From the IMG/VR virus record IMGVR_UViG_3300033997_000243, positions 62,001 through 126,000 of that record: a stretch of DNA of 64,000 nucleotides. One strand, written 5' to 3'. Below are positions 1-14,350 of the stretch, in pieces. Position numbers and translations under genes: made by a program. The notes beneath the pieces were generated by a model that made no database searches, was not told the DNA's origin, and was given only the letters and a program-made list of their open reading frames with translations. Within the stretch, counting starts at the first letter, position 1. Every line of letters begins with the position of its first letter.

Positions 1-2
1 AT

Positions 3-119
3 GGGCAAATTGTTTACCGTTGGTGTCACGATTCAACTGGTTTTGAATGCAGCCAAGTTGAAAATCCGGCTTACGTAAGTAACCAACACGATCCTAAAAA
101 CATTATGATGGTGCGCTAA
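3..119 (+). CDS. 3' end of an upstream CDS (partial, ...GQIVYRWCHDSTGFECSQVENPAYVSNQHDPKNIMMVR*)
   Basis: Frame 3 is open from the window start to TAA 117-119, which overlaps the ATG of the next gene (TAATG coupling). Confidence 0.5.
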   Translation, partial: GQIVYRWCHDSTGFECSQVENPAYVSNQHDPKNIMMVR

Positions 120-1039
120 TGGAATTCAGATACAATTCAGATACTCCATTCCAATTAGGTGAATGGTTTAAAATAGAGCGTAATCATTTCTGGCATGTGT
201 ACTTAGATTCACGTATTAAAATTCGTGATGACAAAGGCGCTGTTGCTGTAGTTGATGAACGTACTTTGCGAGATCTTGTTGAAAAAAGCTTAATGCTTAA
301 TGGCGATCCTGCTTTGTTCGATTCTGTTTGGATTACACTAAACAACATTAAACCTGTTGCCATTGACTCTAAGGATATTGTTAGCGAAAGTGCAACATTG
401 AATTACAACTACCGTGTTGTTCTTCAACCTCCTGCAATTAAAAAAGCGCATCCATTAGCAATAGGTTTTCTTGAGGAAAATCTTGAACGCAGAAGAAATG
501 AATGGTGCTACCCATTAGCTGACATTGAGCGTAAGGCCGTAAATCAAGCTTTAGATTACACAGGATTTAAGAAGAAGATCAACTTAAATCATTTTATTCT
601 GTGTAAATCTGATGTAGTACCTACTTGCTTCAGTCGTCAAACCGATGCCTCTATAAAAGCGCGTCAGTTGCTTGTTCTGAACTTCAATCAACTTCAAGGC
701 TTACGTTCAGGTGCAATAACTTCAGGATTCCTTGCTCAAGTTATCACGCACGAGCTTGCTCACTTTTTAATGTATGATGGCATTGTACGTCAATCTCAGA
801 TGGAGCGTTACAAACAAGCTTTGGTTGCAAGACGTTTGCATCCAGATCAATTTAATCATGCAGGATATACTTATCCTTGGTATGAAGAAGCTTGGGCTAC
901 ATTGTGTGAGTATATGGTTCACGGTAAATCTGAACGTGGTTTAAGCTGCACAGATGGTTGGGAACTTGCAAAACAATACTTCGATAACAACTTTTTAATT
1001 AACGGAAATCCAACTGGTGATCGCTTAATTAAAATTTAA
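119..1039 (+). CDS. Putative zinc metallopeptidase (HExxH, gluzincin-like)
   Basis: VITHELAHFLM followed by WYEEAWA (candidate third ligand E). Confidence 0.65.
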   Translation: MEFRYNSDTPFQLGEWFKIERNHFWHVYLDSRIKIRDDKGAVAVVDERTLRDLVEKSLMLNGDPALFDSVWITLNNIKPVAIDSKDIVSESATLNYNYRVVLQPPAIKKAHPLAIGFLEENLERRRNEWCYPLADIERKAVNQALDYTGFKKKINLNHFILCKSDVVPTCFSRQTDASIKARQLLVLNFNQLQGLRSGAITSGFLAQVITHELAHFLMYDGIVRQSQMERYKQALVARRLHPDQFNHAGYTYPWYEEAWATLCEYMVHGKSERGLSCTDGWELAKQYFDNNFLINGNPTGDRLIKI

Positions 1040-1048
1040 GGAAAACAT

Positions 1049-1447
1049 ATGAAAATCAAAGTATTCGTTTCGCAAAGTTCGTACTCTTTGGCCAGACTTA
1101 AAGCATCTGACTCTAAATTCAGACAGTTGGCTGACGACAGATTTACTTCGTCACAAATCAAAAAACTTATGACCAAAGGAACGAAACTTCTTATGGTTGT
1201 TACAGGTGCTTACACACGTAAGGCTGATAACAAAGTAACTCCACAACTAAACAAATATACTCTTGTCATCAAAGAAGTTGAAATAGCTGGCAACGGAAAA
1301 TTAAAAAGAGTGTTGATTGCTCCAGAAGGTAAACATTCAAAAGATGAAATTAAACCTTTATCTGCGGCTGCTTTGGCAAAACTGTTGAACGGCGAAAAGG
1401 CTACTCTTAAATCTAAGAAAGGCACCAAAAGTGCTTCTCTTAAATAA
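1049..1447 (+). CDS. Lys-rich hypothetical protein with shared N-terminal leader (putative internal head protein)
   Basis: SD AAGGA; starts MKIKVFVSQSS; highly basic. Confidence 0.75.
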   Translation: MKIKVFVSQSSYSLARLKASDSKFRQLADDRFTSSQIKKLMTKGTKLLMVVTGAYTRKADNKVTPQLNKYTLVIKEVEIAGNGKLKRVLIAPEGKHSKDEIKPLSAAALAKLLNGEKATLKSKKGTKSASLK

Positions 1448-1465
1448 ATTCAATAGGAAAATCTT

Positions 1466-2293
1466 ATGAAAATTCAAGTTATGTTGTCTGAGAGCGCAGA
1501 TTTAACTGCTGCCCAAGAAAAGAAAATTGTTGTTGGCGGTACTTTTACTTTATATACAATAGTATCAACTAAAAAGACTCCACCAAGACCGAGCATTGGC
1601 TTTATTCCGAAAGAAACTATAGAGCGCTACAAAAAGATGCCTCCTGTTATAACAAAGGCGGCCACTAACTATCGTATAACCGAAGTGAATAGCACTAAAT
1701 CTGGATCAGTTAAATCCATAGTTGCTGTTGCAGAGCGTGACAATTCTCTTACACGTAAGCATCCCGGCAATTTATCAACTTTAACATTAACTAAAGCTAA
1801 ACTTTTGAGTTTAATCGGAAACAAAATAACAAAAGAAGATGTTGGAAGTCAGAGTATAACACTTACTACAAATTCTAAAGATACAACAGCATTCTTTAAC
1901 AAAACTGAGGCAAAAGACAAACAACGCATAAAAGCCTTAGATGAACAAATAGCTAAACTTCAAAAACAACGTGAAGAATTAGCTGGAGTTCAGAAAAAGC
2001 GTAACGATGCTATACACGATGCGGAATCCGCTAAGAAACGTGCTGAACTTAAAGCACAAGGCTATAGTTATTTAGTTGTTATTGAAGGTAAAGAAACAAA
2101 GAAAAAAACTTTAAGTGAAGCCCGTTCAGTCAGACCAAAGATCGGTGAAACCGCTTCGATTTTTGCTGTATTAGCAGGTAAACGCTCAAAGATTCTTACG
2201 TGGTCAGCTAAAGATCCTGTAACCAAAAGAGTCCTTAAAGGATATAATTGGTTCTTTACTTCAGCTGCTGCACAGAAAAAGTTTGATGTATGA
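1466..2293 (+). CDS. Lys-rich hypothetical protein with shared leader; central coiled coil
   Basis: SD AGGA; starts MKIQVMLSESA. Confidence 0.75.
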   Translation: MKIQVMLSESADLTAAQEKKIVVGGTFTLYTIVSTKKTPPRPSIGFIPKETIERYKKMPPVITKAATNYRITEVNSTKSGSVKSIVAVAERDNSLTRKHPGNLSTLTLTKAKLLSLIGNKITKEDVGSQSITLTTNSKDTTAFFNKTEAKDKQRIKALDEQIAKLQKQREELAGVQKKRNDAIHDAESAKKRAELKAQGYSYLVVIEGKETKKKTLSEARSVRPKIGETASIFAVLAGKRSKILTWSAKDPVTKRVLKGYNWFFTSAAAQKKFDV

Positions 2294-2330
2294 ACTTAAT
2301 GCGTTCGATTCCTACTATTAAGGCGGCCCT

Positions 2331-2933
2331 ATGAAAATCAAAGTATTTATTAGCTCTTCAAATAACAAACCTAAAAAAATTGGAGGCTCCAATTGGTTTG
2401 ATGAACTTTCAGACGAAGCTAAAAAAGAATATATTGAAGAACATCCAAATAGTCAGTACGCTAAACATCATATGCGTATGGCAAAACATAAGGAACGTAA
2501 ATCAAGGACTGGCCAATTCGCATCCGGCTTAGATCCTAGATTTGCAGAAGCATCTAAAGGTTTAGATCCTAATCTATTAAAAGAAGTATCTAAACTGGAT
2601 GACGATTTGCAGCAAAGTTTCGCCAAAAGATTTTCTGGCGCTATGGAAGAGTTTGGTTTGGATGCTGATAGTGAAGAAACAACTGCTTCACTGGAAAGTC
2701 ACAAAAATAGAGCGTTGAAAGCAAAGAAAGATGCAGAAAACGCAACTAATCCTATCGCCAAAAAGAAAGCTTTAGCTACTTTTGAGCGTGAACGAGATAA
2801 CTACAAAGAGTTAAAGCTTGCTCACCAGAAAGCTTTGGATGTTTTAAAGACTCCTGGTAAGTTGGATAAATTTAAGAATCAGCTTGGTAGACAGCTTTTA
2901 AGTAAGCTAAGTAAAGTTCAAGCGGAAGAGTAA
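2331..2933 (+). CDS. Basic hypothetical protein with shared leader
   Basis: Starts MKIKVFISSSN; WFDELSDEAKKEYIEEHPNSQYAK resembles a motif recalled from jumbo-phage virion proteins. Confidence 0.75.
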   Translation: MKIKVFISSSNNKPKKIGGSNWFDELSDEAKKEYIEEHPNSQYAKHHMRMAKHKERKSRTGQFASGLDPRFAEASKGLDPNLLKEVSKLDDDLQQSFAKRFSGAMEEFGLDADSEETTASLESHKNRALKAKKDAENATNPIAKKKALATFERERDNYKELKLAHQKALDVLKTPGKLDKFKNQLGRQLLSKLSKVQAEE

Positions 2934-2935
2934 GA

Positions 2936-3094
2936 ATGAAAAAACTCATGGTGGCTAATCTTGCTAAGAAAATTCCTGAAGATCAGCGCAATAAACGTCA
3001 ACAAAAATTAGTTGATGAAATTCCTGAGATTCATGCACGCCTTAAACAAAAAACTGGCCCCTTTGCCTTTATGCGTAAATCGAAGTTTAATTAA
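2936..3094 (+). CDS. Small basic ORF, 52 aa (MKKLMVANLAKK...RKSKFN), absent from the ORF track
   Basis: Translated by hand; fills the gap between 2933 and the terminator at about 3093. Confidence 0.6.
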   Translation: MKKLMVANLAKKIPEDQRNKRQQKLVDEIPEIHARLKQKTGPFAFMRKSKFN

Positions 3095-3113
3095 GGGCTT
3101 CGGCCCTTTTCTT
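3093..3113 (+). terminator. Intrinsic terminator with C(UUCG)G tetraloop
   Basis: AAGGGC-TTCG-GCCCTT followed by TTCTTT. Confidence 0.8.
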
Positions 3114-3124
3114 TAGGTGAGCTT

Positions 3125-3457
3125 ATGAAAATTCTTGTGAGTCTTTGTACAAGTGTAGACAGTATTCAAAAAGAAAATGGTAAACTTGTATACAAGGGAA
3201 TGACTTTCATTGATTTTGATAAACCCATTGAAATAAAGGATAAGCGCTACAAACGTGCGGTATTAGCACGTAAAGGAAATAATTTTAAACTAATAAAGTA
3301 TGGCCATGTTGACTATGAAGATTTCACTACTCACAAAGATCCTGAACGTAGAGAAAATTTTCGCAAAAGATTTCGTGGCATCTTAAAGTCTAATGGTAAG
3401 CCAGCTTATAAAGATAAATGGCAAGCTGCGTATTGGGCATACAACGATCTTTGGTAG
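3125..3457 (+). CDS. Basic protein with leader; DUF5754-like family (recalled from large DNA viruses)
   Basis: MKILVSLCTS leader; YGHVDYEDFTTHKDPERRENFRKRF...AAYWAYNDLW. Confidence 0.65.
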   Translation: MKILVSLCTSVDSIQKENGKLVYKGMTFIDFDKPIEIKDKRYKRAVLARKGNNFKLIKYGHVDYEDFTTHKDPERRENFRKRFRGILKSNGKPAYKDKWQAAYWAYNDLW

Positions 3458-3465
3458 GGAATTCT

Positions 3466-4143
3466 ATGAAGGTTAATATATTAATTTCTGAATCTGCTTC
3501 GACAACTCGTGCATTTAAAGCAAAACTTGCTGAATTAGGTTCCTTATTGTTTGAGTCAGATAATAAATTGATCAGGGAACTAAAGGTAACTAAACCTTTT
3601 GTTAAGACCATTGATGGATTAGCTTATGCTATCCGACTTGCACGTAAATCACACGTTGCTCAAAATAAAGTTGAAGAGTTAGCTACTTTGCTCGGAGTCA
3701 ATCCAGCACATATAACTTCTGCTGTGGATAAAACTGGCTATTGTCTCCACTTTAGCTCTGGTGCTGCTACCAAAGCAATTGCTACATTAAAAAGAATGGC
3801 TAAAGCCAAATCAGTTGGAGCACCTGCTAAAAAATCTAAGACCGCAGACTTCGGTTGGAATGTAGCAATCCAACAAATGACTCGTCAGAAAGAGAATATT
3901 GTTCAAGATAAAGGTCTTGAAGTTGCAGCTAAATGTAAACTGGCTTTTGCTGACCGCATTGATAAGCTTGTTGCTAAAAATACTAAAACACATGATGTCA
4001 GAAGTTTTAGTATGGAAGTTGTTGACTATCCACAAATGACAAGCACTGTCGGCACAGACGAAGTTTATATAACTGTCAAACTAAAGCTGGATCAAAAATC
4101 TCGACCTTCTCAGGGTCGTCCAGTGAAAAAAGAATTCAAGTAA
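3466..4143 (+). CDS. Basic hypothetical protein with shared leader
   Basis: Start moved from 3418 to ATG 3466 (SD AGGGA); begins MKVNILISESA. Confidence 0.75.
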   Translation: MKVNILISESASTTRAFKAKLAELGSLLFESDNKLIRELKVTKPFVKTIDGLAYAIRLARKSHVAQNKVEELATLLGVNPAHITSAVDKTGYCLHFSSGAATKAIATLKRMAKAKSVGAPAKKSKTADFGWNVAIQQMTRQKENIVQDKGLEVAAKCKLAFADRIDKLVAKNTKTHDVRSFSMEVVDYPQMTSTVGTDEVYITVKLKLDQKSRPSQGRPVKKEFK

Positions 4144-4173
4144 TTGGTCGCTCTAAAAAGAATTCAAGTAATT
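4127..4173 (+). repeat. 19-bp direct repeat AAAAAGAATTCAAGTAATT x2
   Basis: Copies at 4127-4145 and 4155-4173; the first spans the stop codon of the upstream gene. Confidence 0.85.
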
Positions 4174-4200
4174 AAATATTTTAGTTAAAGGAAATCAAAA

Positions 4201-5421
4201 ATGAAAATTCGTGTATTCACATCAACCTCAGCGCGTAAGCGTGATATTGTAGTAAATCAAGTTGGCACCAGTTTTGAAGTGTCTGTTGACGATAAAGTTC
4301 TGGTTAAGTTTACTGGCAAAGCAACACCTGATACTATTACAGAAAAATTGCAAAAGAAAGAATTCAATGGCGCAGAAATCAAACGTGTGTTTGCTCAGAT
4401 TGCTAAGCTTGGTAAAGCTGATTCCCGTGAAGTTAAGGTTAAACCTTCAGCTGCTGATTCAAAAACAAAGAAACAGCTTTTCTCTGATGCAACTGTACGT
4501 TTGGTGGCAAAAGAATTTCCAGAAGCTATAGCTACTTTAGCTCAACTGAATAAAACAGATCGTGCTAAAGCCTATGCCAGATCGCATCATGGCCTTGGTA
4601 TGGGTGTTCGGAATTTTATGCGTTCTAAGACCACAGAAAAAGCAGTGAGAAATCCTGTCACTGCCGACGATATTTGGTCAGAAGTTTTAGATCGTGCAAT
4701 CGAATTGAAACTTTATAAAGATACGGATGCTGATGTTTACCAGTTAGCAAAAATAACTGGTAATGCTGTAAAAGAGTTGGATATGGTTTTGTACAAAGAC
4801 GCAGATTCAGTGAAGAAATTAGGAGCCTCTATTGCACGTAGCTTGAAAAAAGCTTTCGGTGATGGCATGACTATTAAAGCTCGTGTACGTGAGCACTTTA
4901 GTCCGTCACCTAATGTACCTGCACACAGATACAATCACTTTGCTGTTTCCTTACCTATCAATATGATTACTGTAGGCGGCAACAATAAACTAAATATTTA
5001 TGTCGGTACTGGCATTGTAATGATCGAAGAGGATGGGCCGAAATCTACTAAGGTTACTAACCATAAACTGGTGAAAGGAACTAACGCAGAAGTTTTGGAG
5101 GCTATTACCAAGAATCTTAAGATCAAAACCAATACTGTTGAAAAACCTGCGTCAACAGGAAAATTCAATGAAGCAAGTCAATATGTTGTTGATAAATTCG
5201 GCAAAGATCTTAAGGCAAAAGGTATTGACTTAATACCTACACCTGGTGGCATTAGTTTTTATCATCCACGTCGCGGAACCGTTAAAGCACGTTTCGGAAT
5301 CAAAAATGGTAAGATGATGCACATGACTAAGTATAAGGCCAGTTTTGGTGAAACTTTTGACATGAGTAAACCAATTAGTAAAGCTGTTATCAGCAAAATT
5401 GTCGCTCCCTTACTTAAATAA
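4201..5421 (+). CDS. Basic hypothetical protein with shared leader
   Basis: SD AAGGA; starts MKIRVFTSTSA. Confidence 0.8.
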   Translation: MKIRVFTSTSARKRDIVVNQVGTSFEVSVDDKVLVKFTGKATPDTITEKLQKKEFNGAEIKRVFAQIAKLGKADSREVKVKPSAADSKTKKQLFSDATVRLVAKEFPEAIATLAQLNKTDRAKAYARSHHGLGMGVRNFMRSKTTEKAVRNPVTADDIWSEVLDRAIELKLYKDTDADVYQLAKITGNAVKELDMVLYKDADSVKKLGASIARSLKKAFGDGMTIKARVREHFSPSPNVPAHRYNHFAVSLPINMITVGGNNKLNIYVGTGIVMIEEDGPKSTKVTNHKLVKGTNAEVLEAITKNLKIKTNTVEKPASTGKFNEASQYVVDKFGKDLKAKGIDLIPTPGGISFYHPRRGTVKARFGIKNGKMMHMTKYKASFGETFDMSKPISKAVISKIVAPLLK

Positions 5422-5434
5422 TTTTTCCATAGGA

Positions 5435-5603
5435 TAAGGAGGTGATCCATATCTCGTGGTAACTACACCACGTTAAAGAAGGTAGTAGAGCAACCGCTCC
5501 GCTGCATAGAGTCAGTGATTTGATCAACTTTAACTGGAGATCATTATGAAGGCACTTCTTATCTAAACTTTATTTCAAGAGCATTCTTTTGGGTGCTCTT
5601 TCT
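5435..5603 (+). ncRNA. Candidate structured small RNA or leader element (16S 3'-end complement, pseudoknot, mini-ORF, terminal hairpin)
   Basis: TAAGGAGGTGATCCA 5435-5449; stem CGTGGT/ACCACG whose loop ACTAC is complementary to GTAGT 5482-5486; hairpin AAGAGCATTC-TTTT-GGGTGCTCTT 5577-5600. Confidence 0.45.
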
Positions 5604-5629
5604 AATAAGGTTTCCACTAAGGAACAAAT

Positions 5630-6286
5630 ATGAAAATTCGTGTATTCATTTCAGAATCAAGTCAAGAAGATGAAGAGTTTCAAAGAATTTGCGCGTTGTA
5701 CCTTGAGCGTCAATCCGTAGTACGTGCTTTAGGTGAAATCGACCGTGTGGTAAACGCCACAACTCAGGACGCAAACGAAATAGAAAGTGATAAAAGCTTT
5801 AATACTCGTAAACGAAATCTTCAGGAAGAGGTTGCAAAGTTTGATCTTGAAATCTCAAATCTCAAACGCAGAATTTTATACGGTACTTCTCCGTGGAAAA
5901 GTAAAGATAGCGAGTGGGTTAAAGAATTTATAGCAAAATGTTCTACCTCACTTATTGCCAATCCTTCACTAATACAAGCGAATAATGAAACCCAGTATAT
6001 AGAAGTAGCTTCAAAACTTCGCAGAGAGTTACTTGATAGTGTTAGAATGATCGCAAACTTTAAAAGCGAAAATATAGCTAATCTGTTATACGCTTGCGCT
6101 AAGTTTTATTTGGATATGTCAAACAGCGGTCAAAGTTCTTTATCTCAAGTTACGTATTCGGCTGCTGTAACCGAATTGCATAAAGTTCTTGAGTTATATG
6201 AACCTATTCTTATTCGTATATACAAACACGGCATTCGTAAAGATTACATGAAAGTGTTTGCTCAGGTTTTCAAGAATTTTGGTTAA
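5630..6286 (+). CDS. Helical hypothetical protein with shared leader
   Basis: SD AAGGA; starts MKIRVFISESS. Confidence 0.8.
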   Translation: MKIRVFISESSQEDEEFQRICALYLERQSVVRALGEIDRVVNATTQDANEIESDKSFNTRKRNLQEEVAKFDLEISNLKRRILYGTSPWKSKDSEWVKEFIAKCSTSLIANPSLIQANNETQYIEVASKLRRELLDSVRMIANFKSENIANLLYACAKFYLDMSNSGQSSLSQVTYSAAVTELHKVLELYEPILIRIYKHGIRKDYMKVFAQVFKNFG

Positions 6287-6296
6287 GGAATTTATT

Positions 6297-7115
6297 ATGC
6301 CTAATGCTGTGGTTAAATCTTATGCGGAAAAGACGGGCAAATCTGTAAAAGAAGTTGAGGCTCTTTGGGATCAGGCTAAGCAAATAGCAGGTAAAAAGTT
6401 TAAGGAAAATACCGAAAAGTTTTACCGTTACACAATGGGCATTTTTAAACGTAGCTTAGGTATATCCTCGGTTCAAACTATTGTGTCTGTAAGCACAACA
6501 ACTGGCGCACTTATAAGTCGTTCTGGTTGTTCTTGTGATGAAACAAAAGATGAAGGCCGCTTTAAAATTTGGTGGCAAGGCCCAGTCTATTCTTCAAAAA
6601 TTCTGTATGCCGCTGATAGTATTCCAGATTTGTTTGCTATGGTGGATTCTACTAGATTGCGCCAAAAACATTATCCTGAAGGAACTTACAGAATTATTGA
6701 TGACGCTGCTGACGGAAAAAGTGTTTATGGTCTACATCGTTTCGGTGGGAATGGTAGTCCAATAAAAGAACTTTGGATTCCATTGGATTTTAATCATAAA
6801 GAATTATCCAAAGTAGATTCAAGAACCACAGCTTTTCTCGCCAACTACTTAAAAGCAAATCTTTCTACACTTGAGTCAAGCTTATCAACTCACGAATTTC
6901 TTTCTCGTATGGAGCAATACGCCACTTATTATTTTAATGCAAAAGAAAGATTTGAAAGTTTATCCCCAGTTCCTGCATTTGAATCTAGCATGGATGGCCA
7001 AGCTTTATTGTCTGTTTTTCAAGATACAAATAATGCTGATCGTATTCGCTGGAAATATCCTGACAGTGCAAAGCGTGGAACCTATCCAAAAATTGAAAGT
7101 CTTGTTTTTAATTAA
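6297..7115 (+). CDS. Hypothetical virion/prohead-core-like protein
   Basis: Start moved to ATG 6297 (SD AAGGA); N-terminal module MPNAVVKSYAEKTGKSVKEVEALWDQAK...FYRYTMGIFKR resembles a small myophage protein family; internal QTIVSVST leader-like motif. Confidence 0.7.
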   Translation: MPNAVVKSYAEKTGKSVKEVEALWDQAKQIAGKKFKENTEKFYRYTMGIFKRSLGISSVQTIVSVSTTTGALISRSGCSCDETKDEGRFKIWWQGPVYSSKILYAADSIPDLFAMVDSTRLRQKHYPEGTYRIIDDAADGKSVYGLHRFGGNGSPIKELWIPLDFNHKELSKVDSRTTAFLANYLKANLSTLESSLSTHEFLSRMEQYATYYFNAKERFESLSPVPAFESSMDGQALLSVFQDTNNADRIRWKYPDSAKRGTYPKIESLVFN

Positions 7116-7117
7116 TC

Positions 7118-7153
7118 AAAAGCCAGTTGAACCAAGTGTTCGCTGGCTTTTTT
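7118..7153 (+). terminator. Intrinsic terminator
   Basis: AAAAGCCAG...CTGGCTTTTTT. Confidence 0.8.
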
Positions 7154-7182
7154 CATTTCCCTCATTGTTTTCCACTTAAATC

Positions 7183-7193
7183 TATAATTTAGT
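7183..7193 (+). promoter_or_regulatory. Candidate late promoter TATAATTTAGT
   Basis: Identical 11-mer at 29925-29935; core TAATTTA also occurs upstream of the scaffold and sheath genes. Confidence 0.45.
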
Positions 7194-7230
7194 TAGGTAA
7201 GACAAATTAACCGTGTACAAAGGAACTCGT

Positions 7231-8931
7231 ATGAAAAAGCCGATTAAAGCCAAGGTTACGCCTGTGCATGATAAAAATGCAGCCAAGCCAAAAGCTAAGA
7301 AACCAGTTGTAATTCCGAATAGCATTAAGTATGCTGCGGAAAAATCGAAATCTCGTGTTGTGTTTGCTGTTCCAGGCCGTTACATTTTAAAAAATCGTCG
7401 TGCAACCTTCGCTATTGTGCGGATTGCAGATGACGTTAAAATGAGTCCAAGCGTAGCCACTAAAGTTTTCAAGGTTACTGCAAGTGATATGGATCTTACA
7501 CAAGAACAAATCTTTGCACTTGAGCCAATTGAAATGGATTCTTTGAGTGCTGCACCTGGTGCGAAAGTTTCTGGTCTTGACTCAAAGATGGGCAAGAAAA
7601 CACATGCACCAAATACCTTATCAAAAGGTTGGTGGGTTTTCCGTAAAGGTAATGACGGTAAAGTTGCAAAAGCTTTTGCTGGTGGCCGCATCAGTGGTCG
7701 TCGTATCTTATCTTTAATCGATCCTTCTCAAGCACCTAAGCCAAAAACTGAAGTGATTGACGAAACCAAAAAAGCTCCGGCCAAGAAAACTGGTGCTGAA
7801 TTAAAAGCAGCTGGTCAAATCAAAGCTTTGCAGACTGAGTTCAAAAAACTTGGTGGCGAACTTACTGCTGGCAAAGAACGCTTAACCACTTTACAACGTG
7901 CAACATCTAAAATTGCTTTGAAAGAAAAGCTGAAGAAAATAATTGCCCGTCGTAAAGAAATTTCTGCTGAGATTAAAGCTTTGAAATCTGGTGAACCTGC
8001 ACCAAAAATTAATCCTTCAGCTAAGGCTCCTGCCGTTAAGAAACCTGCTGCTACAGGAAAGATCACTAAGTCTGATATTAGTGCGTTACCTAAACGCCAA
8101 CAAACAGCTTATATGAATCTGAAGGAAAAAGGCACGGCTATTGTTCAGGCTATTAAAGCACTGAGAGAAAAGTTGACTAAGTTGAAAACAAAACCAGCTA
8201 AAGCCAAAGTAGAAGCTGAGATTGCTAAGCAAACAAAACTTCGTGATAAGGTTGTAAAAGCTTTAGCTGACTTCCATGAAAAAATTCGTAATGGAAGTGC
8301 AGGTCAGGTAGTTCCTGCTCATAAACAAAAACCTTCAAAATCACCTGAAGCTGGTAAAGCAGTTCCTCCTGCTAAAAAACCAAAGGCTGAGCCAGCATCT
8401 AAAGCTCCGGCAGCTAAGCCAAAAGCTACGGTTCCAAATGCTGAAGTAAAACAGGCCAAACAAGAAGTTAAAAAGTTGGATCAAGAAATTGATCGTGACG
8501 TTCAAACAATAGATCGTTTGAAAGACATGCTTGAAAAAACAAAAGACGTTAATCGTCGTAAAAAACTTCAGGCCAGCATTGATGGTCTTAACAAGCGTAT
8601 TGATTTAAAAGCTCGTAAGCAAAGTGGTGCGAATAGCGTACTGCAATCAAAAAGCAGTGAGCAAATTTACTTCCCTACTTACTCAGCTGCCGTTCAACAT
8701 GCCGTCGATGGTTTAGCTTCAAAAGGATTAGCCTACGAAGCTGCCGATTTTGAACGCATCGTCACACATGGAACAGCAAAACCTGCTGCTGGTAAAACAA
8801 CTCGCTTTGTGTTGCCAATTAAATCTAAAGGCGGCTTGATCAGTAAGAGCGCTAAAGGTTTAACTGTTGCTGTTTATCATGCAGATGATCGCACTCAAAA
8901 TCCATTTGAATTAACTCACTACGTTTCTTGA
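7231..8931 (+). CDS. Large Lys/Ala/Pro-rich (histone H1-like composition) putative DNA-condensing head protein; paralog of 8964
   Basis: SD AAGGA before ATG 7231; PAKK/PAAK repeats, coiled coils; N-terminal ~150 aa align with 8964. Confidence 0.7.
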   Translation: MKKPIKAKVTPVHDKNAAKPKAKKPVVIPNSIKYAAEKSKSRVVFAVPGRYILKNRRATFAIVRIADDVKMSPSVATKVFKVTASDMDLTQEQIFALEPIEMDSLSAAPGAKVSGLDSKMGKKTHAPNTLSKGWWVFRKGNDGKVAKAFAGGRISGRRILSLIDPSQAPKPKTEVIDETKKAPAKKTGAELKAAGQIKALQTEFKKLGGELTAGKERLTTLQRATSKIALKEKLKKIIARRKEISAEIKALKSGEPAPKINPSAKAPAVKKPAATGKITKSDISALPKRQQTAYMNLKEKGTAIVQAIKALREKLTKLKTKPAKAKVEAEIAKQTKLRDKVVKALADFHEKIRNGSAGQVVPAHKQKPSKSPEAGKAVPPAKKPKAEPASKAPAAKPKATVPNAEVKQAKQEVKKLDQEIDRDVQTIDRLKDMLEKTKDVNRRKKLQASIDGLNKRIDLKARKQSGANSVLQSKSSEQIYFPTYSAAVQHAVDGLASKGLAYEAADFERIVTHGTAKPAAGKTTRFVLPIKSKGGLISKSAKGLTVAVYHADDRTQNPFELTHYVS

Positions 8932-8934
8932 TAA

Positions 8935-8952
8935 AATGGGCTTCGGCCCATT
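8935..8952 (+). terminator. UUCG-tetraloop hairpin (probable terminator)
   Basis: AATGGGC-TTCG-GCCCATT; weak U tract. Confidence 0.55.
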
Positions 8953-8963
8953 AAGGAAAAACA

Positions 8964-10007
8964 ATGATTATCTCGTTGAGCGTTTCGGCAAAGAAGCCAG
9001 CCGTGCCGAACAGTGTTCAGTATGTTTTGGAACAAGCTAAAGGCCGTTTAGTTTTTGCGGAATCAGGACGTTATGTTTTCAAAACAAGACAAGGCGATTT
9101 TGCTTTAGCCCGTTTCAAAGACGAAACTAAATTTTCACCATCTATGAATGTGAAAATGTTTAGCAATAAAATGGTTTCTAAATCGGAAGATTTCAATGTA
9201 AGTACAGAAGCTTACTCTGAACCTGAAGATGAATTGCAAGCAGAAGCGGCAGCTAAAGCACCTGGTGCAAAAAATAATGCAGCCTCTACAAAGATGGGCG
9301 TTAAAAAACGTGCTCCTGGAATGATGGCTCCAGGTTGGTGGCTTTTCCATAAAGACGGCGGTAAGGTTACTCGTCAGTATGTTGGCCCACGTTTAAGCGG
9401 AAGAAAATTACTTTCTCTTGTTAAGTCTGAGAGCCAATCTAATAATGGTAAGCCTGATACAAAAGAAACCAAACATGATATTGGAGACAATACTCCGGTT
9501 AAAGTATCTAAAGTAAGTGAACTTTATGTTCCAACAAAAGATCCTGTTAATGACGCAATCAAAGTATGGAAAGCCTTGGACAAAAAACTTGAGTCCGAAG
9601 GTATTCCAACAAAAGAAACTTTAGCTGCTGTTGATGCTGCTATAGCTAAAATGCAAAAGATGTACGATGTTTTAACTTCACCTGAAAACAAAAGCAAACA
9701 TTTAGGTGACAGTATTGAACTTAACTACTACCTGAAAGACCTGAAATCTATAAGATCTGAAATGGCTAAAAAACCAAAATTAGATGAAGCAAATAAAAAA
9801 ACGCTTGCTTTATTTATGAAGGCTAAAGATGATGGTCACGGAAACATTCAAGTAAATTTTGGTGAAGAAGCAAAAGCAAAAGCAGCTAAAACTTTAATGT
9901 CAAGCTTAGGTATTTTAGCTTACACTACAGGAATGAATAGAAGATACGTCAATATTGGCAAACCTGGACATAAAAAGCTTAGAGCAATTATGAAGCAATT
10001 GTCTTAA
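8964..10007 (+). CDS. Basic hypothetical protein with leader; paralog of 7231
   Basis: Starts MIISLSVSA; shares PNS..Y.....K.R.VFA..GRY and APGAK..KMG..GWW.F.K..GKV blocks with 7231. Confidence 0.8.
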   Translation: MIISLSVSAKKPAVPNSVQYVLEQAKGRLVFAESGRYVFKTRQGDFALARFKDETKFSPSMNVKMFSNKMVSKSEDFNVSTEAYSEPEDELQAEAAAKAPGAKNNAASTKMGVKKRAPGMMAPGWWLFHKDGGKVTRQYVGPRLSGRKLLSLVKSESQSNNGKPDTKETKHDIGDNTPVKVSKVSELYVPTKDPVNDAIKVWKALDKKLESEGIPTKETLAAVDAAIAKMQKMYDVLTSPENKSKHLGDSIELNYYLKDLKSIRSEMAKKPKLDEANKKTLALFMKAKDDGHGNIQVNFGEEAKAKAAKTLMSSLGILAYTTGMNRRYVNIGKPGHKKLRAIMKQLS

Positions 10008-10012
10008 ACCAA

Positions 10013-10056
10013 CGAAAATCGACTTAAATTTATTTTCTATTTTTTGTCGATTTTCG
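10013..10056 (+). terminator. Inverted repeat / probable terminator
   Basis: CGAAAATCGAC / GTCGATTTTCG 11-bp stem with a 22-nt AT-rich loop. Confidence 0.55.
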
Positions 10057-10078
10057 TGCTGTTCTTAGTTGTAAAACT

Positions 10079-10085: not shown

Positions 10086-10135
10086 ATGGTATACGGAATG
10101 ACACTCTGTATATGAACTTTAACAGGAGCCACACG

Positions 10136-12469
10136 ATGATCAAGACAAAAATGAAAGCCTCAAAACAGGCTATCATAGTTCATGGCGCAAGTGAGGCAGA
10201 GGCTATCGCTAAATATACAGCTGTTGCTTCTGGAGAAAGCCTTCAAGCTTTCACAGACGGTACAAATGAGTTTTATACTCATGCGTCAGCAACATCTTTA
10301 TATAATCCAGACACAGGAGATTTTGATCTTGATGCTTTGGACAATGGTGAATTTTCTGCTGAAGCCAGCGCTCGTACTGGAGCCGTAGATGTTTTCTACG
10401 GCGTATGTTCTGATGGTTGCGGTGAGCATGTTGTTGCTGACTGCCCTGTCACTTTCTGTCCTTCATGTTCAAGCGCTATGCCTGAAGAAGATGAAGGAGT
10501 CGATTTATCAGATGATGAAGATCTGGTATCGATGGAAGATGAAGAACCGGAAGAAGAAACTGAAGAAGAAATGGATGATGTTGAATACGAAGATTTAGAA
10601 GCTGAAGCTTCTGAAGGCATGATTGTAGTTTCAGGTGATAACTTAGATGAAGCACTTGAAAACTTCCGTGCCGTAGCTTCAAATCAAAGTCAACGTGTTA
10701 TTACTTCAGGCCATTCGGTTTTTGTAACTCATGCCAGTGATTCATTTGATTATGATCCATTAACCGGATCGCCAGACATCGAAGAAGCTGAAGCCTCTGA
10801 AATTACTATGCAGAGTGAAAGTTCTGACGGTAGCGACAACGTAGAAGCTGAACATTATATTTGTTCAGATGTTGACGGTTGTGGCGCACACGTAATCAGT
10901 ACCTCAAGTTCTGTATTGAACTGTCCTCGTTGTGCCAGCGGTTTGTTAGATCCGGCTGATTTCCATTCACACTCAGAAGATGATTCTGAAGATGAAGAAC
11001 TGGAAGCACTGTCGGCTGAAATCGAAGAACTGGAAAACGAATTAGGTATCTCAAGCGAAAGCGCTGACGAAGAGTTAGATGCTGAAATCGCTGCGTTACT
11101 TGCTGAATCAGGTGACGAAGAAGAAACCGAAGAAGAGGAAGAAATGGAGGAAGTTAATTATGACGACCTCGAAGCAGATCTTGCCTCTGATTTAGAATTC
11201 GAAGAAGAACTGGAATCTGAAAGTTCTGACAGCGATCTGGATGAAGATTTAGATCCAGATGCTGAAGAAGATTTATCAAGCGATGACATTCTTGAATCAG
11301 AATCTTATGATGAAAACGACGAGTTTGAATCTGTAAGTGCTGACGAAGATGAAGAGTATGATTTAGATGCTCTTGATCAAGAAATGTCTGCTTTAGATTC
11401 AGACGATATGGAATCAGAAAGTTCTGATGACATTGAATTGGATTCCGACATTGCCGCACTTCTGGCCGAATCAGAAGATGAAGAAATGGAAGATGACGAA
11501 ACTGAAGAAGAGTCCATTGAAATGGATGAATCTGAAGAAGAATCTGAAGAAGAAATCGAAGATACTGAATTAGATGACGAAGGTGACTACGGTGACATCG
11601 AAGGTCTGGATTTAGAATCAGAAAGTTCTGAATCTCCTGTAATGGAATTCGACGTCGATTTGTTATCTGCAATTTCTGCAACGGAAGATTTATCTGTTGA
11701 TAAATTCCATGTTGCTCACTGCGGTAAAATTGAAGGTCAATCAACTTGGACAGCATTCTATGGAAAACTTCCTGTAGCTATGGCGTCTGAGTCAAGTGTC
11801 GCTGATAAAGCTGCACTGAAAGATATTTTTGAAAGCGCTAAATTCGGTTCCGCTATCATGGCTCATGCGAAAGCTGAAGGCATTGAAAGTGCATTAGCTG
11901 AATTTAACTTTGAACGTATCAGTCCAGACCTTGATGTTGATGCTGTTGTGTCTAACGAAATCATTAAACGCAGCGAAAGCCGTGTTCGTGAAGTCGAGAC
12001 ACAAATGCAATCATACTCTGCAAATGTTCAAGCTGAAATAAATGCAGATATGGAACATCGTATGGATCGTTTAATGTCAGCATTAGCTACTTCGGCTTTA
12101 GGCATTAACCGTCATGTTTTTGCAAATGTAAGAAACCCAGTTGCTGATGCTCTGATTAGTGCATTATCTTCTGCTGGAGTTCGTAACGCTGACTCATTGG
12201 TTTCAGATGCTTTTGCTCAACACGGTGATCGTTACAGCGAAATCCTTTTAGGTCAAGCTCGTGAACTTCTGGAAAAATCAGAAGATACTCAAGACGAAAT
12301 TACACAACTTGTAGTTTCTGCTTCTGTGAATCGCGGTGGCTTAACAAGTGAAAGTAATACAGTGGAAGATCGTTTGTCTAACTTAACCACGGTTAAGCCT
12401 CAAACTCTTCAATCTGAATCTGCTCACAAACCACAAACAAATCGTTACCTGAGTCTTTTAGATTCGTAA
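10136..12469 (+). CDS. Prohead scaffold/core protein, extremely acidic, with two Cys4 zinc-ribbon modules
   Basis: Directly upstream of the decoration and capsid genes; long D/E tracts; CSDGCG...CPSC and CSDVDGCG...CPRC; SD CAGGAG before ATG 10136. Confidence 0.75.
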   Translation: MIKTKMKASKQAIIVHGASEAEAIAKYTAVASGESLQAFTDGTNEFYTHASATSLYNPDTGDFDLDALDNGEFSAEASARTGAVDVFYGVCSDGCGEHVVADCPVTFCPSCSSAMPEEDEGVDLSDDEDLVSMEDEEPEEETEEEMDDVEYEDLEAEASEGMIVVSGDNLDEALENFRAVASNQSQRVITSGHSVFVTHASDSFDYDPLTGSPDIEEAEASEITMQSESSDGSDNVEAEHYICSDVDGCGAHVISTSSSVLNCPRCASGLLDPADFHSHSEDDSEDEELEALSAEIEELENELGISSESADEELDAEIAALLAESGDEEETEEEEEMEEVNYDDLEADLASDLEFEEELESESSDSDLDEDLDPDAEEDLSSDDILESESYDENDEFESVSADEDEEYDLDALDQEMSALDSDDMESESSDDIELDSDIAALLAESEDEEMEDDETEEESIEMDESEEESEEEIEDTELDDEGDYGDIEGLDLESESSESPVMEFDVDLLSAISATEDLSVDKFHVAHCGKIEGQSTWTAFYGKLPVAMASESSVADKAALKDIFESAKFGSAIMAHAKAEGIESALAEFNFERISPDLDVDAVVSNEIIKRSESRVREVETQMQSYSANVQAEINADMEHRMDRLMSALATSALGINRHVFANVRNPVADALISALSSAGVRNADSLVSDAFAQHGDRYSEILLGQARELLEKSEDTQDEITQLVVSASVNRGGLTSESNTVEDRLSNLTTVKPQTLQSESAHKPQTNRYLSLLDS

Positions 12470-12503: not shown

Positions 12504-13205
12504 ATGCTTAACTATGCAAATACTCGTTTCTTCAAGACCGTTGACCGCGTTCTGGCCGACGGCGTTGGTATCAAAGAAGAAGGTTTCACTTTAGCTTTAG
12601 TTCAGGAAGAAGGTGAGTTACGTGCTCGTCTTTCAACTGGCGTTTCTGGTGAAATTTTTGGTGGCTTCGCTTGTTCAACAAACCTGCCAACAACTTTCTC
12701 AACTAAAGTTGTTGAAATTGCTGAACTGGATGATTTGACTGTTCAGTTAGATCGTACTCCACAATCTGCACAGATTCTGGTTAAAGTTGCTGGCGTTAAA
12801 TTAACTGTTGAAACTGGCACAGCTGCACCAACTGCTGATACTTCAGTTGTTCTGACTCCAGCCAACACTTTACTGTTCCACGGTAATGCTGCTGGCGAAT
12901 CAGTATTAATTCAGTATCATTATGAACTGTTAGCTTCTGAAGCAGTTGCTGAAACTGGCGATTACTTCGGTGGTGTAGGTAACAGTCCGGCTTCTGTTAT
13001 GGGTGTAGTTGGTGCTGTAATCGAAGGCACAATCTCTACAAACTTGTTCTTTGCTTCTGACGACTGGACTGGTGTTATCCATCCGAAGATGGGCGCTGGC
13101 GGTATGTTACGTGCTTCAGGTAATGGTACAGAATTAACGAATGTTAAAGTTGTACAAGTGCCGAACGCTGGTTCACCTTTCCTGACAGTTGAAGTTGGTA
13201 ACTAA
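12504..13205 (+). CDS. Head decoration/cement-like structural protein
   Basis: Lies between scaffold and capsid gene; highly-expressed codon usage; beta-rich; SD GGAG. Confidence 0.6.
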   Translation: MLNYANTRFFKTVDRVLADGVGIKEEGFTLALVQEEGELRARLSTGVSGEIFGGFACSTNLPTTFSTKVVEIAELDDLTVQLDRTPQSAQILVKVAGVKLTVETGTAAPTADTSVVLTPANTLLFHGNAAGESVLIQYHYELLASEAVAETGDYFGGVGNSPASVMGVVGAVIEGTISTNLFFASDDWTGVIHPKMGAGGMLRASGNGTELTNVKVVQVPNAGSPFLTVEVGN

Positions 13206-13252
13206 TAGTTACTGATTAAAACTTGAATCAAATTTTTGTGGAGAAATACAGT

Positions 13253-14347
13253 ATGAAAACCAATTTACAAGTCGGCGCTTCTTATCAACTGAAGAACGGC
13301 GCACCTTTGCACGATCTTCGTTTTGCCGGACAAGGTATGGCTGCACTTTCATCTAACGGTGAAATTAACGCATCAAGCAATGCAGATCTGTTAAAACAAA
13401 TTGGCCAACTTTTACAATCAGTATCAAGCGGTACTGTTGTTCAAGCTGCAACGCCTGATTCTTTCCTGTCATTATCTGCCGAGCAGAAACGTGATATTTT
13501 AGTTGCCGCAAAAGCATGTCCTAATAAGTGGGCTGCTTTAGGTGCTCACATTGCTGCTGACGTTCGTGAACAAGCAAGTCGTCAAGGTTTTTCACGCAAT
13601 CTGTGTGTGATCAATAACCTGAAGCAAGGTGAAACTCAAAAAGTTCCAATGCCTCGCCATCAAGCTAAAGCCGTTTTAGCTACTGGCCCAACTTCAATTT
13701 CTTACCAAATGATGCGTGATAAATATTTCACGCCACCAGAGTTTGAATTGAAAGCTGCTGTTCGCGTGAACAAACTGGATTTGGGTCAAGCGACTCACGA
13801 TCTGTTAGACCACGCTTACAACGATGCTGTTGAAGGTATGATCACTGCTGCTGACCGCGTGTGGAAACGTGCTGCTGATGCAACTGTAGGTAAAGCAAAT
13901 ACTTTAGCTGCTTTCGCTGGTGCATTTACTCCTGCCGTTATCGCTCGTGCTTCAACACAAATTCGTGATTGGAACTTACCAGTAAGTCGCGCTGTTATCG
14001 CAAACAGTTTTTGGGAAGATATTCAATCTGAAGGTGCCTGGGCCAATACACTGACTCCAGTATCTCAGTACGAATTAGTTATGACTGGCCGTGTTGCAAC
14101 TATCTTCGGTCTGGAATTAACTACTGACGGTTTCCGTCCTGAAAACCAACGTGTTCTGTCTCGCGGTGAAGCGTACATTGTTGCTGATAATGAATATCAC
14201 GCAACTTTAGGTTCTCGCGGTGGCATTGAATCTACTCCGACCGATGGTGCAAACCAAGGCGATACAACTAAGGGCTGGTTACTGTCAGAGGTTATGTCTC
14301 TGATAATTCCAAATACTCGCTCTGTAGTTAAAATGCAAAAGCTGTAA
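13253..14347 (+). CDS. Major capsid protein (HK97 fold)
   Basis: Start moved to ATG 13253 (SD GGAG); SRQGFSRNL..L.QG...P, ATGPT...FTPPEF, AADRVWK and TG.V.TIFG.EL.TDGFR motifs recalled from PaBG/Y3-type jumbo MCPs; position. Confidence 0.85.
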   Translation: MKTNLQVGASYQLKNGAPLHDLRFAGQGMAALSSNGEINASSNADLLKQIGQLLQSVSSGTVVQAATPDSFLSLSAEQKRDILVAAKACPNKWAALGAHIAADVREQASRQGFSRNLCVINNLKQGETQKVPMPRHQAKAVLATGPTSISYQMMRDKYFTPPEFELKAAVRVNKLDLGQATHDLLDHAYNDAVEGMITAADRVWKRAADATVGKANTLAAFAGAFTPAVIARASTQIRDWNLPVSRAVIANSFWEDIQSEGAWANTLTPVSQYELVMTGRVATIFGLELTTDGFRPENQRVLSRGEAYIVADNEYHATLGSRGGIESTPTDGANQGDTTKGWLLSEVMSLIIPNTRSVVKMQKL

Positions 14348-14350
14348 GAA

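What the first reader, a model, noticed from the sequence alone, without database searches (positions are those of the whole stretch)
1049..10007. 9-kb block of strongly basic ORFans abutting an extremely acidic scaffold
Seen: about ten consecutive Lys-rich proteins, with 7231 showing histone-H1-like PAKK/PAAK tracts, directly precede a scaffold with several hundred residues of D/E-rich sequence. Inference: the acidic scaffold could recruit basic cargo electrostatically in the prohead, and after scaffold proteolysis the basic proteins could condense DNA or coat the injected genome against host nucleases.
Basis: partly seen in the sequence, partly recalled or inferred. Interest (0 to 1): 0.6.

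Follow-up and report, generated by a model that had tools for sequence, protein, structure and literature searches.

The report
Leader-tagged basic head cargo genes
A jumbo phage carries, between its head protease and its very acidic scaffold gene, a row of lysine-rich proteins that nearly all start with the same ten-residue tag, which most likely sends them into the capsid and is then cut off, much as phage T4 loads the internal proteins it injects with its DNA.

Summary
Eleven consecutive + strand ORFs (1049-10007) are mostly very basic. They abut a 785-aa protein of pI 4.05 and net charge -185, which lies just upstream of the major capsid gene of a 319.5-kb jumbo phage of the Lu11/PaBG/Dickeya-Erwinia group.

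Seven of the eleven ORFs start with one conserved leader, M-K-I-x-V/I-x-x-S-x-S-S/A. An eighth (8964) has a variant. The leader is conserved as peptide, not as DNA. A strict pattern finds it only in this block; a looser one adds a second seven-gene array outside the window and a few singles.

The leader ends in a motif, hydrophobic-x-S-x-S then S/A, that recurs 10 times in the acidic protein and twice in the capsid protein's N-terminus. It is invariant in a disordered linker of the 7231 protein. At aligned sites, Lu11 and PaBG carry A-T/V-A-S instead.

Related phages keep the leader but swap the cargo; one cargo is an ADP-ribosyltransferase. PaBG's positional counterpart, gp83, is a published abundant virion protein.

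Best reading: T4-like internal or ejection proteins with a capsid-targeting and cleavage leader. Electrostatic recruitment and DNA coating remain plausible but untested. These are not true ORFans, and the histone H1 likeness is compositional only.

The parts
1..119 (+). 3' end of the prohead (head maturation) protease gene. The whole gene is L004:15292-16119, probable start 15325.
   Evidence: phrog_18299 at E 6.7e-88. 43% identical to Lu11 gp072. A 50-sequence family alignment shows invariant H131 and S188.
119..1039 (+). HExxH (zinc-metallopeptidase-like) protein, conserved directly after the protease. It has an internal I-V-S-E-S-A site at residue 87.
   Evidence: phrog_37079. Orthologues in L008, L009 and L014, and Dickeya AD1 gp141. 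Motif.
1049..1447 (+). Leader-bearing basic cargo protein, 132 aa, pI 10.3. No orthologue in L008 or L009.
1466..2293 (+). Leader-bearing basic cargo protein, 275 aa, pI 10.1. Family also present in L008, L009 and L014.
2331..2933 (+). Leader-bearing basic protein, 200 aa, pI 9.4. After the leader it carries a W-F...Y-I/L-x-x-H-P-x-S motif, shared with the 565-aa protein upstream of the protease.
2936..3094 (+). 52-aa basic ORF (pI 10.6) without a clear leader. Its status as a gene is uncertain.
3125..3457 (+). Leader-bearing 110-aa protein with a DUF5754 domain. About 80% identical in L008 and L009.
   Evidence: PF19058 at 37.2 bits against a cut-off of 27.4. Matches positions 510-604 of phrog_220, 'minor head protein and DNA pilot'. 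Identity.
3466..4143 (+). Leader-bearing basic protein, 225 aa counted from the leader ATG. The longer 3418 ORF start is unlikely.
4201..5421 (+). Leader-bearing basic globular protein, 406 aa, pI 10.0. Leader residues M1 K2 I3 S8 S10 A11 are invariant in 10 homologues. The leader is disordered in the model.
   Evidence: No clear fold match.
5630..6286 (+). Leader-bearing protein, 218 aa, only weakly basic (pI 8.3).
6297..7115 (+). Protein without an N-terminal leader, pI about 9.2. Its start is uncertain (TTG 6258 or ATG 6297).
7231..8931 (+). 566-aa protein, pI 10.2, net +68. Predicted as an N-terminal alpha/beta domain, three helical hairpins joined by disordered K/A/P linkers, then a C-terminal domain. 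An invariant L-x-S-x-S site lies in the last linker.
8964..10007 (+). Paralogue of the 7231 protein over its N-terminal domain, 347 aa, pI 9.7. Variant leader M-I-I-S-L-S-V-S-A.
10112..12469 (+). Acidic scaffold-like protein. It has two N-terminal Cys/His modules, about 400 residues of D/E-rich sequence with 10 copies of the S-x-S motif, and a conserved C-terminal domain.
   Evidence: phrog_20988. No Pfam domain. Alignment A1, motif count, repeats.
12504..13205 (+). Virion structural protein, the PaBG gp81 family.
   Evidence: phrog_16710 at E 1.2e-50. PaBG gp81 is in the virion proteome.
13223..14347 (+). Major capsid protein, with motif sites at residues 64-69 and 81-86.
   Evidence: phrog_2522. 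43-49% identical to Lu11 and PaBG. Alignment A2, motif.
17947..18276 (+). Further leader-like start, 109 aa, pI 11.4, inside ORF 17821-18276.
33787..34335 (+). Further leader-bearing basic protein (M-R-I-L-I-S-L-S-S), 182 aa.
37975..39642 (+). 555-aa protein of phrog_23460 starting M-I-I-S-I-S-A, the leader variant also seen at 8964.
40847..41601 (+). Two adjacent small leader-bearing basic genes, 40847-41341 and 41338-41601.

Best explanation
The block is an array of head-internal cargo (ejection) protein genes, sited inside the head morphogenesis module. The gene order is protease, HExxH protein, cargo array, acidic scaffold, decoration or structural protein, capsid protein.

Proposed mechanism:
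1. Each cargo is made with a detachable N-terminal leader of about 8-11 residues: M-K-I/V-x, a short hydrophobic strand, then S-x-S followed by S or A.
2. The front part of the leader directs the protein into the scaffolding core of the prohead. Attraction between basic cargo and the polyacidic scaffold probably helps.
3. The serine prohead protease cuts after the S-x-S motif. This removes the leaders, chops the acidic scaffold at about ten such sites so that it can leave, and trims the capsid protein's N-terminus.
4. The mature, mostly lysine-rich cargo stays with the packaged DNA and enters the host with it. There, different cargo proteins act in host take-over or counter-defence.

What is shown and what is inferred:
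- Shown: the leader, its peptide-level conservation, its restriction to arrays, the shared and lineage-covarying motif, the cargo turnover between relatives, and a virion-resident positional counterpart in PaBG.
- Inferred: targeting, the exact scissile bond, retention in this phage's virion, ejection, and any DNA binding.
For: Leader:
- A strict leader pattern hits only the 7 block genes among 1657 six-frame ORFs of the genome.
- A looser pattern hits 18 of 6044 candidate starts, against 0.64 expected: 7 in the block and 7 in a second array.
- Leader serines use both TCN and AGY codons, and Ile and Val codons vary. Selection is therefore on the peptide.
- The leader is disordered in the AlphaFold model of the 4201 protein (pLDDT 31), yet invariant in 10 homologues.

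Shared motif:
- Hydrophobic-x-S-x-S-S/A occurs 68 times in the proteome, against 23.3 +/- 4.1 in shuffles. Twenty-two occurrences fall within the first 25 residues. There are 10 in the acidic protein, 2 in the capsid protein N-terminus and 3 in the 7231 protein.
- Sites are positionally conserved and covary by lineage. Before the scaffold's C-terminal tail, ours and L008/L009 have Q-S-E-S, Dickeya AD1 has S-Q-S-S, PaBG has A-T-A-S and Lu11 has A-V-A-S.
- At the aligned capsid protein site, ours has S-L-S-A where Lu11 and HRDY3 have A-T-A-S.
- PaBG's capsid protein loses about 20% of its mass on maturation.
- L471, S473 and S475 of the 7231 family are invariant within a disordered linker.

Comparative evidence:
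- L008, L009 and L014 have the same array with the same leader but different gene content.
- In L009 the leader precedes an ART-PolyVal ADP-ribosyltransferase (39.5 bits against a cut-off of 31.2).
- PaBG gp83 (320 aa, pI 10.3) starts with a hydrophobic leader ending in small residues and is encoded just upstream of acidic gp82. It is virion band 9; gp82 is not among the 14 bands.

Precedent: T4 internal proteins are basic, diverse, and share only a 10-residue capsid targeting sequence removed by gp21. Alt, an ADP-ribosyltransferase, is packaged the same way (PMC3012670, PMC9026906).
Against: - There are no virion or N-terminal sequencing data for this phage or its close relatives.
- PaBG gp83 is only a positional and compositional counterpart. 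No homology to the 1466 family was found.
- The second array is not next to head genes, so the leader could serve another destination.
- P1' and P2 of the motif are loose, and several leaders deviate (S-S-S-N, C-T-S-V, A-K-S). The scissile bond is a guess.
- The three proteins 2936-3094, 6297-7115 and 7231-8931 lack an N-terminal leader.
- The protease-leader complex prediction gave no verdict.
- No cargo has a recognisable DNA-binding fold.
Confidence: 0.66

Rival explanations
1. Assembly-only core proteins. The basic proteins co-assemble with the acidic scaffold to build or size the large prohead core. They are then degraded and expelled with it, so they are neither retained with the DNA nor injected.
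For: They lie inside the morphogenesis module. The 7231 protein has three internal motif sites. T4 IPIII affects head assembly and co-purifies with gp22. The summed charges are roughly balanced, about +220 against -185.
Against: PaBG gp83 persists as an abundant virion band listed among 35-kDa proteins, above the processed capsid protein. Most cargo proteins have the motif only at the leader. Gene content turns over between relatives and includes an enzyme, which is unlike structural core parts.
Confidence: 0.14
2. Purely electrostatic loading. Basic proteins are trapped by the polyacidic scaffold, and the shared N-terminus is only a protease site with no targeting role.
For: The charge contrast is extreme. 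The leader's end matches the scaffold and capsid protein motif.
Against: Positions 1-7 of the leader, upstream of the S-x-S part, are as conserved as the site itself. Leader-bearing proteins with pI 6.4-8.3 exist. In T4, the targeting and processing functions map to different parts of the 10-residue tag.
Confidence: 0.1
3. Non-virion intracellular proteins. These would be early or middle DNA-binding or host-takeover proteins, whose shared N-terminus is a degron, a translation-start feature or some other sorting tag unrelated to the capsid.
For: A second array sits among nucleotide-metabolism genes, far from the head genes. No virion data exist for this phage.
Against: Codon usage shows peptide-level, not RNA-level, conservation. 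The same motif sits at conserved sites in the scaffold and capsid proteins. The main array lies between the protease and the scaffold in every relative examined. PaBG gp83 is in virions.
Confidence: 0.07
4. Secretion or lipoprotein signal peptides that send the proteins to the envelope.
For: The start is M-K followed by hydrophobic and then small residues.
Against: The hydrophobic stretch is only 4-6 residues and there is no lipobox cysteine. The motif also recurs inside the cytoplasmic scaffold and capsid proteins.
Confidence: 0.02

Closest known systems
Phage T4 internal proteins IPI, IPII, IPIII and Alt, with the capsid targeting sequence (CTS)
   Same: These are diverse, mostly basic proteins that share only an N-terminal tag of about 10 residues. 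The end of the tag is the prohead protease site. They are loaded into an acidic scaffolding core, kept with the DNA and injected, and one packaged enzyme is an ADP-ribosyltransferase. The repertoire varies between related phages (PMC3012670, PMC9026906).
   Different: - No sequence relation to the T4 tag or to the T4 internal proteins.
- The inferred cleavage follows S-x-S (or A-x-A-S in sister lineages), not L/I-x-E.
- There are about 17-25 tagged genes rather than about 4.
- They are arranged in tandem arrays, the main one placed between the protease and scaffold genes.
- The phage is a Lu11/PaBG-group jumbo phage with an HK97-type capsid protein of 374 aa.
Ejection or inner-body proteins of phiKZ-like giant phages (SPN3US, 201phi2-1)
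   Same: Jumbo phage heads carry many internal proteins that are processed by the prohead protease and ejected (abstracts listed).
   Different: No PHROG or Pfam link to those families. Their cleavage motif ends in Glu. No single shared short leader is described for them (own knowledge).
Pseudomonas phage PaBG gp83 and gp191 (basic virion proteins of unknown function)
   Same: gp83 holds the same genomic position, directly upstream of the acidic scaffold-like gene. It has pI 10.3 and a hydrophobic N-terminal peptide ending in small residues. Its presence in virions is experimentally shown. gp191 has pI 11.3.
   Different: PaBG has one gene at that position rather than an array. There is no detectable homology to the window's proteins. 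The published work does not mention a leader or processing of gp83.
Linker histone H1 C-terminal tails
   Same: K/A/P-rich, disordered, strongly cationic tracts.
   Different: No winged-helix globular domain. The tracts are short linkers between helical hairpins.

Membership tests
T4-type CTS-tagged internal head proteins (functional class) | A short N-terminal peptide shared by otherwise unrelated proteins | tested here: met
T4-type CTS-tagged internal head proteins (functional class) | The tag ends in the motif used at scaffold and capsid protein maturation sites | tested here: met
   The motif is shared, enriched, positionally conserved and covaries by lineage. Actual cleavage was not shown.
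T4-type CTS-tagged internal head proteins (functional class) | Proteins are present in mature virions and ejected into the host | not testable with these tools
   The only evidence is the positional counterpart PaBG gp83 in published virion gels.
T4 IP/CTS sequence family (homology) | Sequence similarity to T4 internal proteins or to the T4 tag, with cleavage after Glu | tested here: not met
   No PHROG or Pfam hit to internal proteins. The leader sequence is different and Glu is not conserved at P1 or P2.
Linker histone H1 | Winged-helix globular domain (Pfam Linker_histone) | tested here: not met
   No Pfam hit at E <= 0.1. No PDB fold hit for the model.
Linker histone H1 | K/A/P-rich disordered cationic tail | tested here: met
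   Linkers are 56-67% K+A+P with pLDDT below 50.
Phage scaffolding protein (10112-12469) | Encoded between the protease and the capsid protein, and absent from mature virions | tested here: inconclusive
   The position criterion is met. The PaBG homologue gp82 is not among the 14 stained virion bands, but that is weak negative evidence.
ATPase (the label carried by phrog_20988 and RefSeq homologues) | A recognisable nucleotide-binding domain | tested here: not met
   No Pfam family at E <= 0.1. The sequence consists of Cys/His modules, an acidic tract and a helical C-terminal region.
DUF5754 (PF19058), for 3125-3457 | Score above Pfam's gathering threshold | tested here: met
   37.2 bits against 27.4.
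phiKZ-like inner body or ejection proteins | Homology to those families, and an S/A/G-X-E cleavage motif | tested here: not met
   No PHROG hits. The motif differs.

The most novel reading that the evidence does not exclude
The leader is a portable capsid-loading code used across a whole clade of jumbo phages (the Lu11/PaBG/Alexandravirus group and uncultured relatives). It marks about 20 genes per genome as an exchangeable arsenal of injected proteins. On this reading, the Cys/His modules at the N-terminus of the acidic scaffold are the leader's receptor. Scanning for the leader would then give the injected proteome of uncultured jumbo phages directly, and would offer a tag for packaging foreign proteins.
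Probability: 0.3. Interest if true: 0.75.

Novelty: new variant of a known kind. Interest (0 to 1): 0.6.

Why it matters
If the leader is a capsid-loading and cleavage tag, it identifies from sequence alone which proteins an uncultured jumbo phage injects with its DNA. These would be candidate anti-defence and host-takeover factors. The variable arrays would then be arms-race hot spots.

It would also be a second, independent example of the T4 CTS principle. Because the protease specificity differs, it would help show how targeting and processing signals co-evolve with the protease. It would also provide a possible tag for loading foreign proteins into large capsids.

In addition, it corrects the 'ATPase' label on the acidic scaffold-like protein in reference genomes of this group.

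Tried and rejected
- Near-identity DNA search of 1-16000 against phage records: no match.
- Pfam and PHROG scans of all block proteins: only DUF5754 and phrog_220 for 3125-3457, plus weak coiled-coil noise.
- PDB sequence searches for the protease, the 7231 protein and the 4201 protein: nothing.
- ESM Atlas feature search for the 4201 and 7231 proteins: no usable hit.
- Foldseek against PDB for both models: no hit at E <= 0.001 and TM <= 0.16.
- VIA wide search of the 4201 model: best Z 9.8 to an actin-capping-protein-like helix and sheet module over residues 200-308. Lower rows included PsiB, an anti-CRISPR and a P1 head chain. I judged this a common arrangement, not diagnostic.
- hhalign of the 1466 family against PaBG gp83: no homology. 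tblastn of PaBG gp83 and Lu11 gp068/gp069 against the genome: nothing.
- Complex prediction of the protease with the leader-bearing N-terminus of the 4201 protein: no verdict, score 0.03. This is not evidence either way.
- PaBG virion proteins gp257 and gp263 were located and carry no leader. gp261 could not be matched by mass. They appear to be tail-region proteins.
- Sigma-70 promoter scan: fewer sites than in shuffles, so uninformative.
- Considered and rejected: signal peptide (leader too short); an RNA-level element (codon variation argues against it).
- Not run: read laying and the large representative protein search, because no claim here rests on expression or on absence of relatives.
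Full report
**Where the window lies**

The window is bases 62001-126000 of a 319,518-bp virus record with direct terminal repeats. The major capsid protein (13223-14347, phrog_2522) is 43-49% identical to those of Pseudomonas phages Lu11, HRDY3 and PaBG and of the Dickeya/Erwinia Alexandravirus-type jumbo phages. The gene order is syntenic with Lu11 and Dickeya AD1: DNA ligase, glycosyltransferase, a 565-aa protein, the head maturation protease, and so on.

The protease gene (phrog_18299, E 6.7e-88) ends at window base 119. The head module therefore reads:
- protease
- HExxH protein (119-1039)
- the basic block (1049-10007)
- acidic protein (10112-12469, phrog_20988)
- virion structural protein (12504-13205)
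- capsid protein
- tail sheath (15692-17317)

**Checking the observation**

- Eleven + strand ORFs fill 1049-10007. Nine have pI 9.4-10.6 and lysine at or above the genome's 90th percentile. 5630-6286 (pI 8.3) and 6297-7115 (pI 9.2) are weaker.
- The run is the densest cluster of pI >= 9.4 genes in the genome. A permutation test of the maximum gives p of about 0.015, so charge alone is only moderately unusual.
- The acidic protein is the most acidic in the genome (net -185, pI 4.05).
- The protein starting at 7231 (566 aa, net +68) has K/A/P-rich tracts, including PAKK and PAAK.

Seven block genes (1049, 1466, 2331, 3125, 3466, 4201, 5630) begin with one leader: M-K-I/V-x-V/I/L, one to three more mostly hydrophobic residues, then S-x-S followed by S or A. 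8964 has a variant, M-I-I-S-L-S-V-S-A.

- A strict pattern finds exactly these seven among 1657 six-frame ORFs.
- A looser pattern finds 18 of 6044 candidate start positions, where 0.64 are expected from its frequency at internal positions.
- Of those 18, seven are in the block and seven form a second tandem array on the minus strand at genome 194.5-198.3 kb, outside the window. The rest are singles: a leader-like start at 17947, 40847-41341, one small ORF near the genome's end, and one internal TTG that is probably a chance match.
- The motif scan adds leader-like starts at 33787, 37975 and 41338.
- The conservation is at peptide level. The serines use TCN and AGY codons interchangeably, and Ile and Val codons vary.
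- In the 4201 family the leader residues are invariant in ten homologues of 53-86% identity. In the AlphaFold model, residues 1-12 are disordered (pLDDT 31) and lie outside the fold.

**The leader ends in a motif shared with head proteins that are normally processed**

The pattern hydrophobic-x-S-x-S-S/A occurs 68 times in the proteome, against 23.3 +/- 4.1 in within-protein shuffles. Twenty-two of these occurrences lie in the first 25 residues.

- Ten copies are in the acidic protein, spread through the D/E-rich tract and before its C-terminal tail. These are the E-S-E-S-S DNA repeats seen.
- Two are in the capsid protein N-terminus, at residues 64-69 and 81-86.
- Three are in the 7231 protein. 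One of them has L471, S473 and S475 invariant across ten homologues, in a linker predicted to be disordered.

In alignments with relatives the sites keep their positions while the residues change by lineage.
- Before the scaffold's C-terminal tail: Q-S-E-S-A/S in this phage, L008 and L009; S-Q-S-S in Dickeya AD1; A-T-A-S in PaBG; A-V-A-S in Lu11.
- At capsid protein residues 81-86: S-L-S-A here, where Lu11 and HRDY3 have A-T-A-S.
- The leaders follow the same rule. PaBG gp83 and Lu11 gp068 start with a hydrophobic stretch that ends in A-x-A or A-A-S.

PaBG's capsid protein is reported to lose about 20% of its mass on maturation, which fits cleavage near these sites. A cut between small residues recalls the Ala/Ser sites of herpesvirus assemblin, to which phage prohead proteases are related (own knowledge; relatedness stated in PMC9026906). 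The protease family here has invariant His131 and Ser188.

**Comparative evidence for exchangeable cargo**

Homologues of the 7231 protein led to three related contigs, L008 (286 kb), L009 and L010. A protease homologue led to L014 (251 kb). All contigs that reach far enough upstream show protease, HExxH protein, an array of leader-bearing and mostly basic genes, and then the acidic protein.

- L009 has 11 leader genes, L008 about 7 and L014 about 5.
- Some cargo families are shared (1466, 2331, 3125, 3466, 4201, 7231/8964). Others are unique to one phage.
- In L009 the leader precedes an ART-PolyVal ADP-ribosyltransferase, above Pfam's threshold, and a weak GNAT-like protein.
- 3125-3457 is a DUF5754 domain. 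It also matches an internal part of phrog_220, 'minor head protein and DNA pilot'.
- In Lu11, HRDY3 and PaBG the space between protease and scaffold holds only one to four small genes.

**Experimental anchor**

PaBG gp83 is 320 aa with pI 10.3 and a computed mass of 35,149 Da; the paper gives 35,127. It is encoded directly upstream of acidic gp82 and is band 9 of the Coomassie-stained virion proteome. gp82 is not listed (PMC7412058). A second PaBG virion protein of unknown function, gp191, maps by mass to a 332-aa protein of pI 11.3. At least one member of this phage group therefore does carry abundant, very basic proteins in its particles. No homology between gp83 and the window's proteins was detectable, so this is support by position and character only.

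**Interpretation**

The closest known system is the set of T4 internal proteins.
- They are basic and present at about 300 copies each. They are diverse between related phages.
- They share only a 10-residue capsid targeting sequence. Its front part targets the protein to the gp22 core, and its end is the gp21 cleavage site.
- Alt, an ADP-ribosyltransferase, is packaged in the same way.
- Lysines of the internal proteins contact the DNA phosphates (PMC3012670, PMC9026906).

The block has every sequence-level hallmark of such a system but no sequence relation to it. It also has a different inferred cleavage rule and many more tagged genes, arranged in arrays.

It is not sufficient, however: the front of the leader is conserved, and some tagged proteins are neutral.

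DNA condensation or protection remains an inference. The 7231 model shows two alpha/beta domains and three helical hairpins joined by cationic disordered linkers, with no fold match. The 4201 model has no diagnostic match either. The protease-leader complex prediction gave no verdict.

**Caveats**

- There are no virion data for this phage.
- The exact scissile bond is inferred.
- The second array lies among non-structural genes.
- Three block genes lack the leader.

The phage's DNA occurs in subsurface and wastewater metagenome runs. No run on record as RNA holds it.

**Verdict**

The best description is a new variant of the T4-type arrangement of tagged internal or ejection proteins, in the Lu11/PaBG jumbo-phage group. 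I found no paper describing this leader.

Noticed in passing
genome 194555-198254, minus strand (L012:4555-8254), outside the window: A second tandem array of seven genes, all starting M-K-I/V-L-V-S/N-x-S-A/S and mostly pI 8.9-10.1. It lies among non-structural genes (a thymidylate-synthase-like ORF and an RNase H-like ORF are nearby).
   Followed up: partly
window 10112-12469: The acidic scaffold-like protein has a duplicated N-terminal module. The first copy has invariant Cys and His residues (C99, C103, H106, C116, C119 in alignment A1), which looks like a zinc ribbon. The 'ATPase' label of phrog_20988 and the RefSeq homologues has no Pfam support.
   Followed up: partly
window 119-1039: An HExxH metallopeptidase-like protein is conserved immediately after the prohead protease in L008, L009 and L014, and as Dickeya AD1 gp141. 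It carries an internal copy of the cleavage-type motif at residue 87.
   Followed up: partly
L009:7396-7881 and L009:6943-7386: In a related contig, the cargo array includes an ART-PolyVal ADP-ribosyltransferase and a weak GNAT-like acetyltransferase, both behind the leader.
   Followed up: partly
L004:13072-14769 (window -2928 to -1231) and window 2331-2933: The 565-aa protein upstream of the protease has the cleavage-type motif at residues 13-18. It shares a W...L-S...Y-L/I-x-x-H-P/K-x-S motif with the 2331 family and with Lu11 gp074.
   Followed up: no
genome 13649-14389 (window -48351 to -47611): A 246-aa protein with pI 11.0 and 24% lysine, the second most positively charged in the genome. 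It may correspond to the very basic PaBG virion protein gp191 (pI 11.3).
   Followed up: no
L004:15292-16119 and alignment A6; L015:10001-10756: The protease family consensus has S-x-S-F near its N-terminus. One distant relative's protease starts with a leader-like peptide, which suggests autoprocessing.
   Followed up: no
window 6297-7115: This protein has no leader. Its N-terminus is a K/E-rich helix-like motif (…Y-A-E-K-T-G-K-S-V-K-E-V-E…), and it has an I-V-S-V-S-T site about 60 residues in.
   Followed up: no
window 3093-3108 and about 8938-8951: Two nearly identical GC-rich hairpins (stem G-G-G-C, loop T-T-C-G) lie just upstream of genes 3125 and 8964. They are terminator-like and may subdivide transcription of the block.
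   Followed up: no
window about 44000: GC skew and coding strand both switch here, with + strand genes up to 44146 and - strand genes from 44241.
   Followed up: no
L004:421-2832: Two adjacent paralogous genes of phrog_12249 (annotated tail sheath) lie upstream, in addition to the main sheath gene at window 15692-17317. PMC7412058 describes duplicated sheath genes for this phage group.
   Followed up: no
window 1049-7000: Near-identical DNA occurs in subsurface metagenome runs, which are the probable source. Partial matches occur in wastewater metagenome runs.
   Followed up: no
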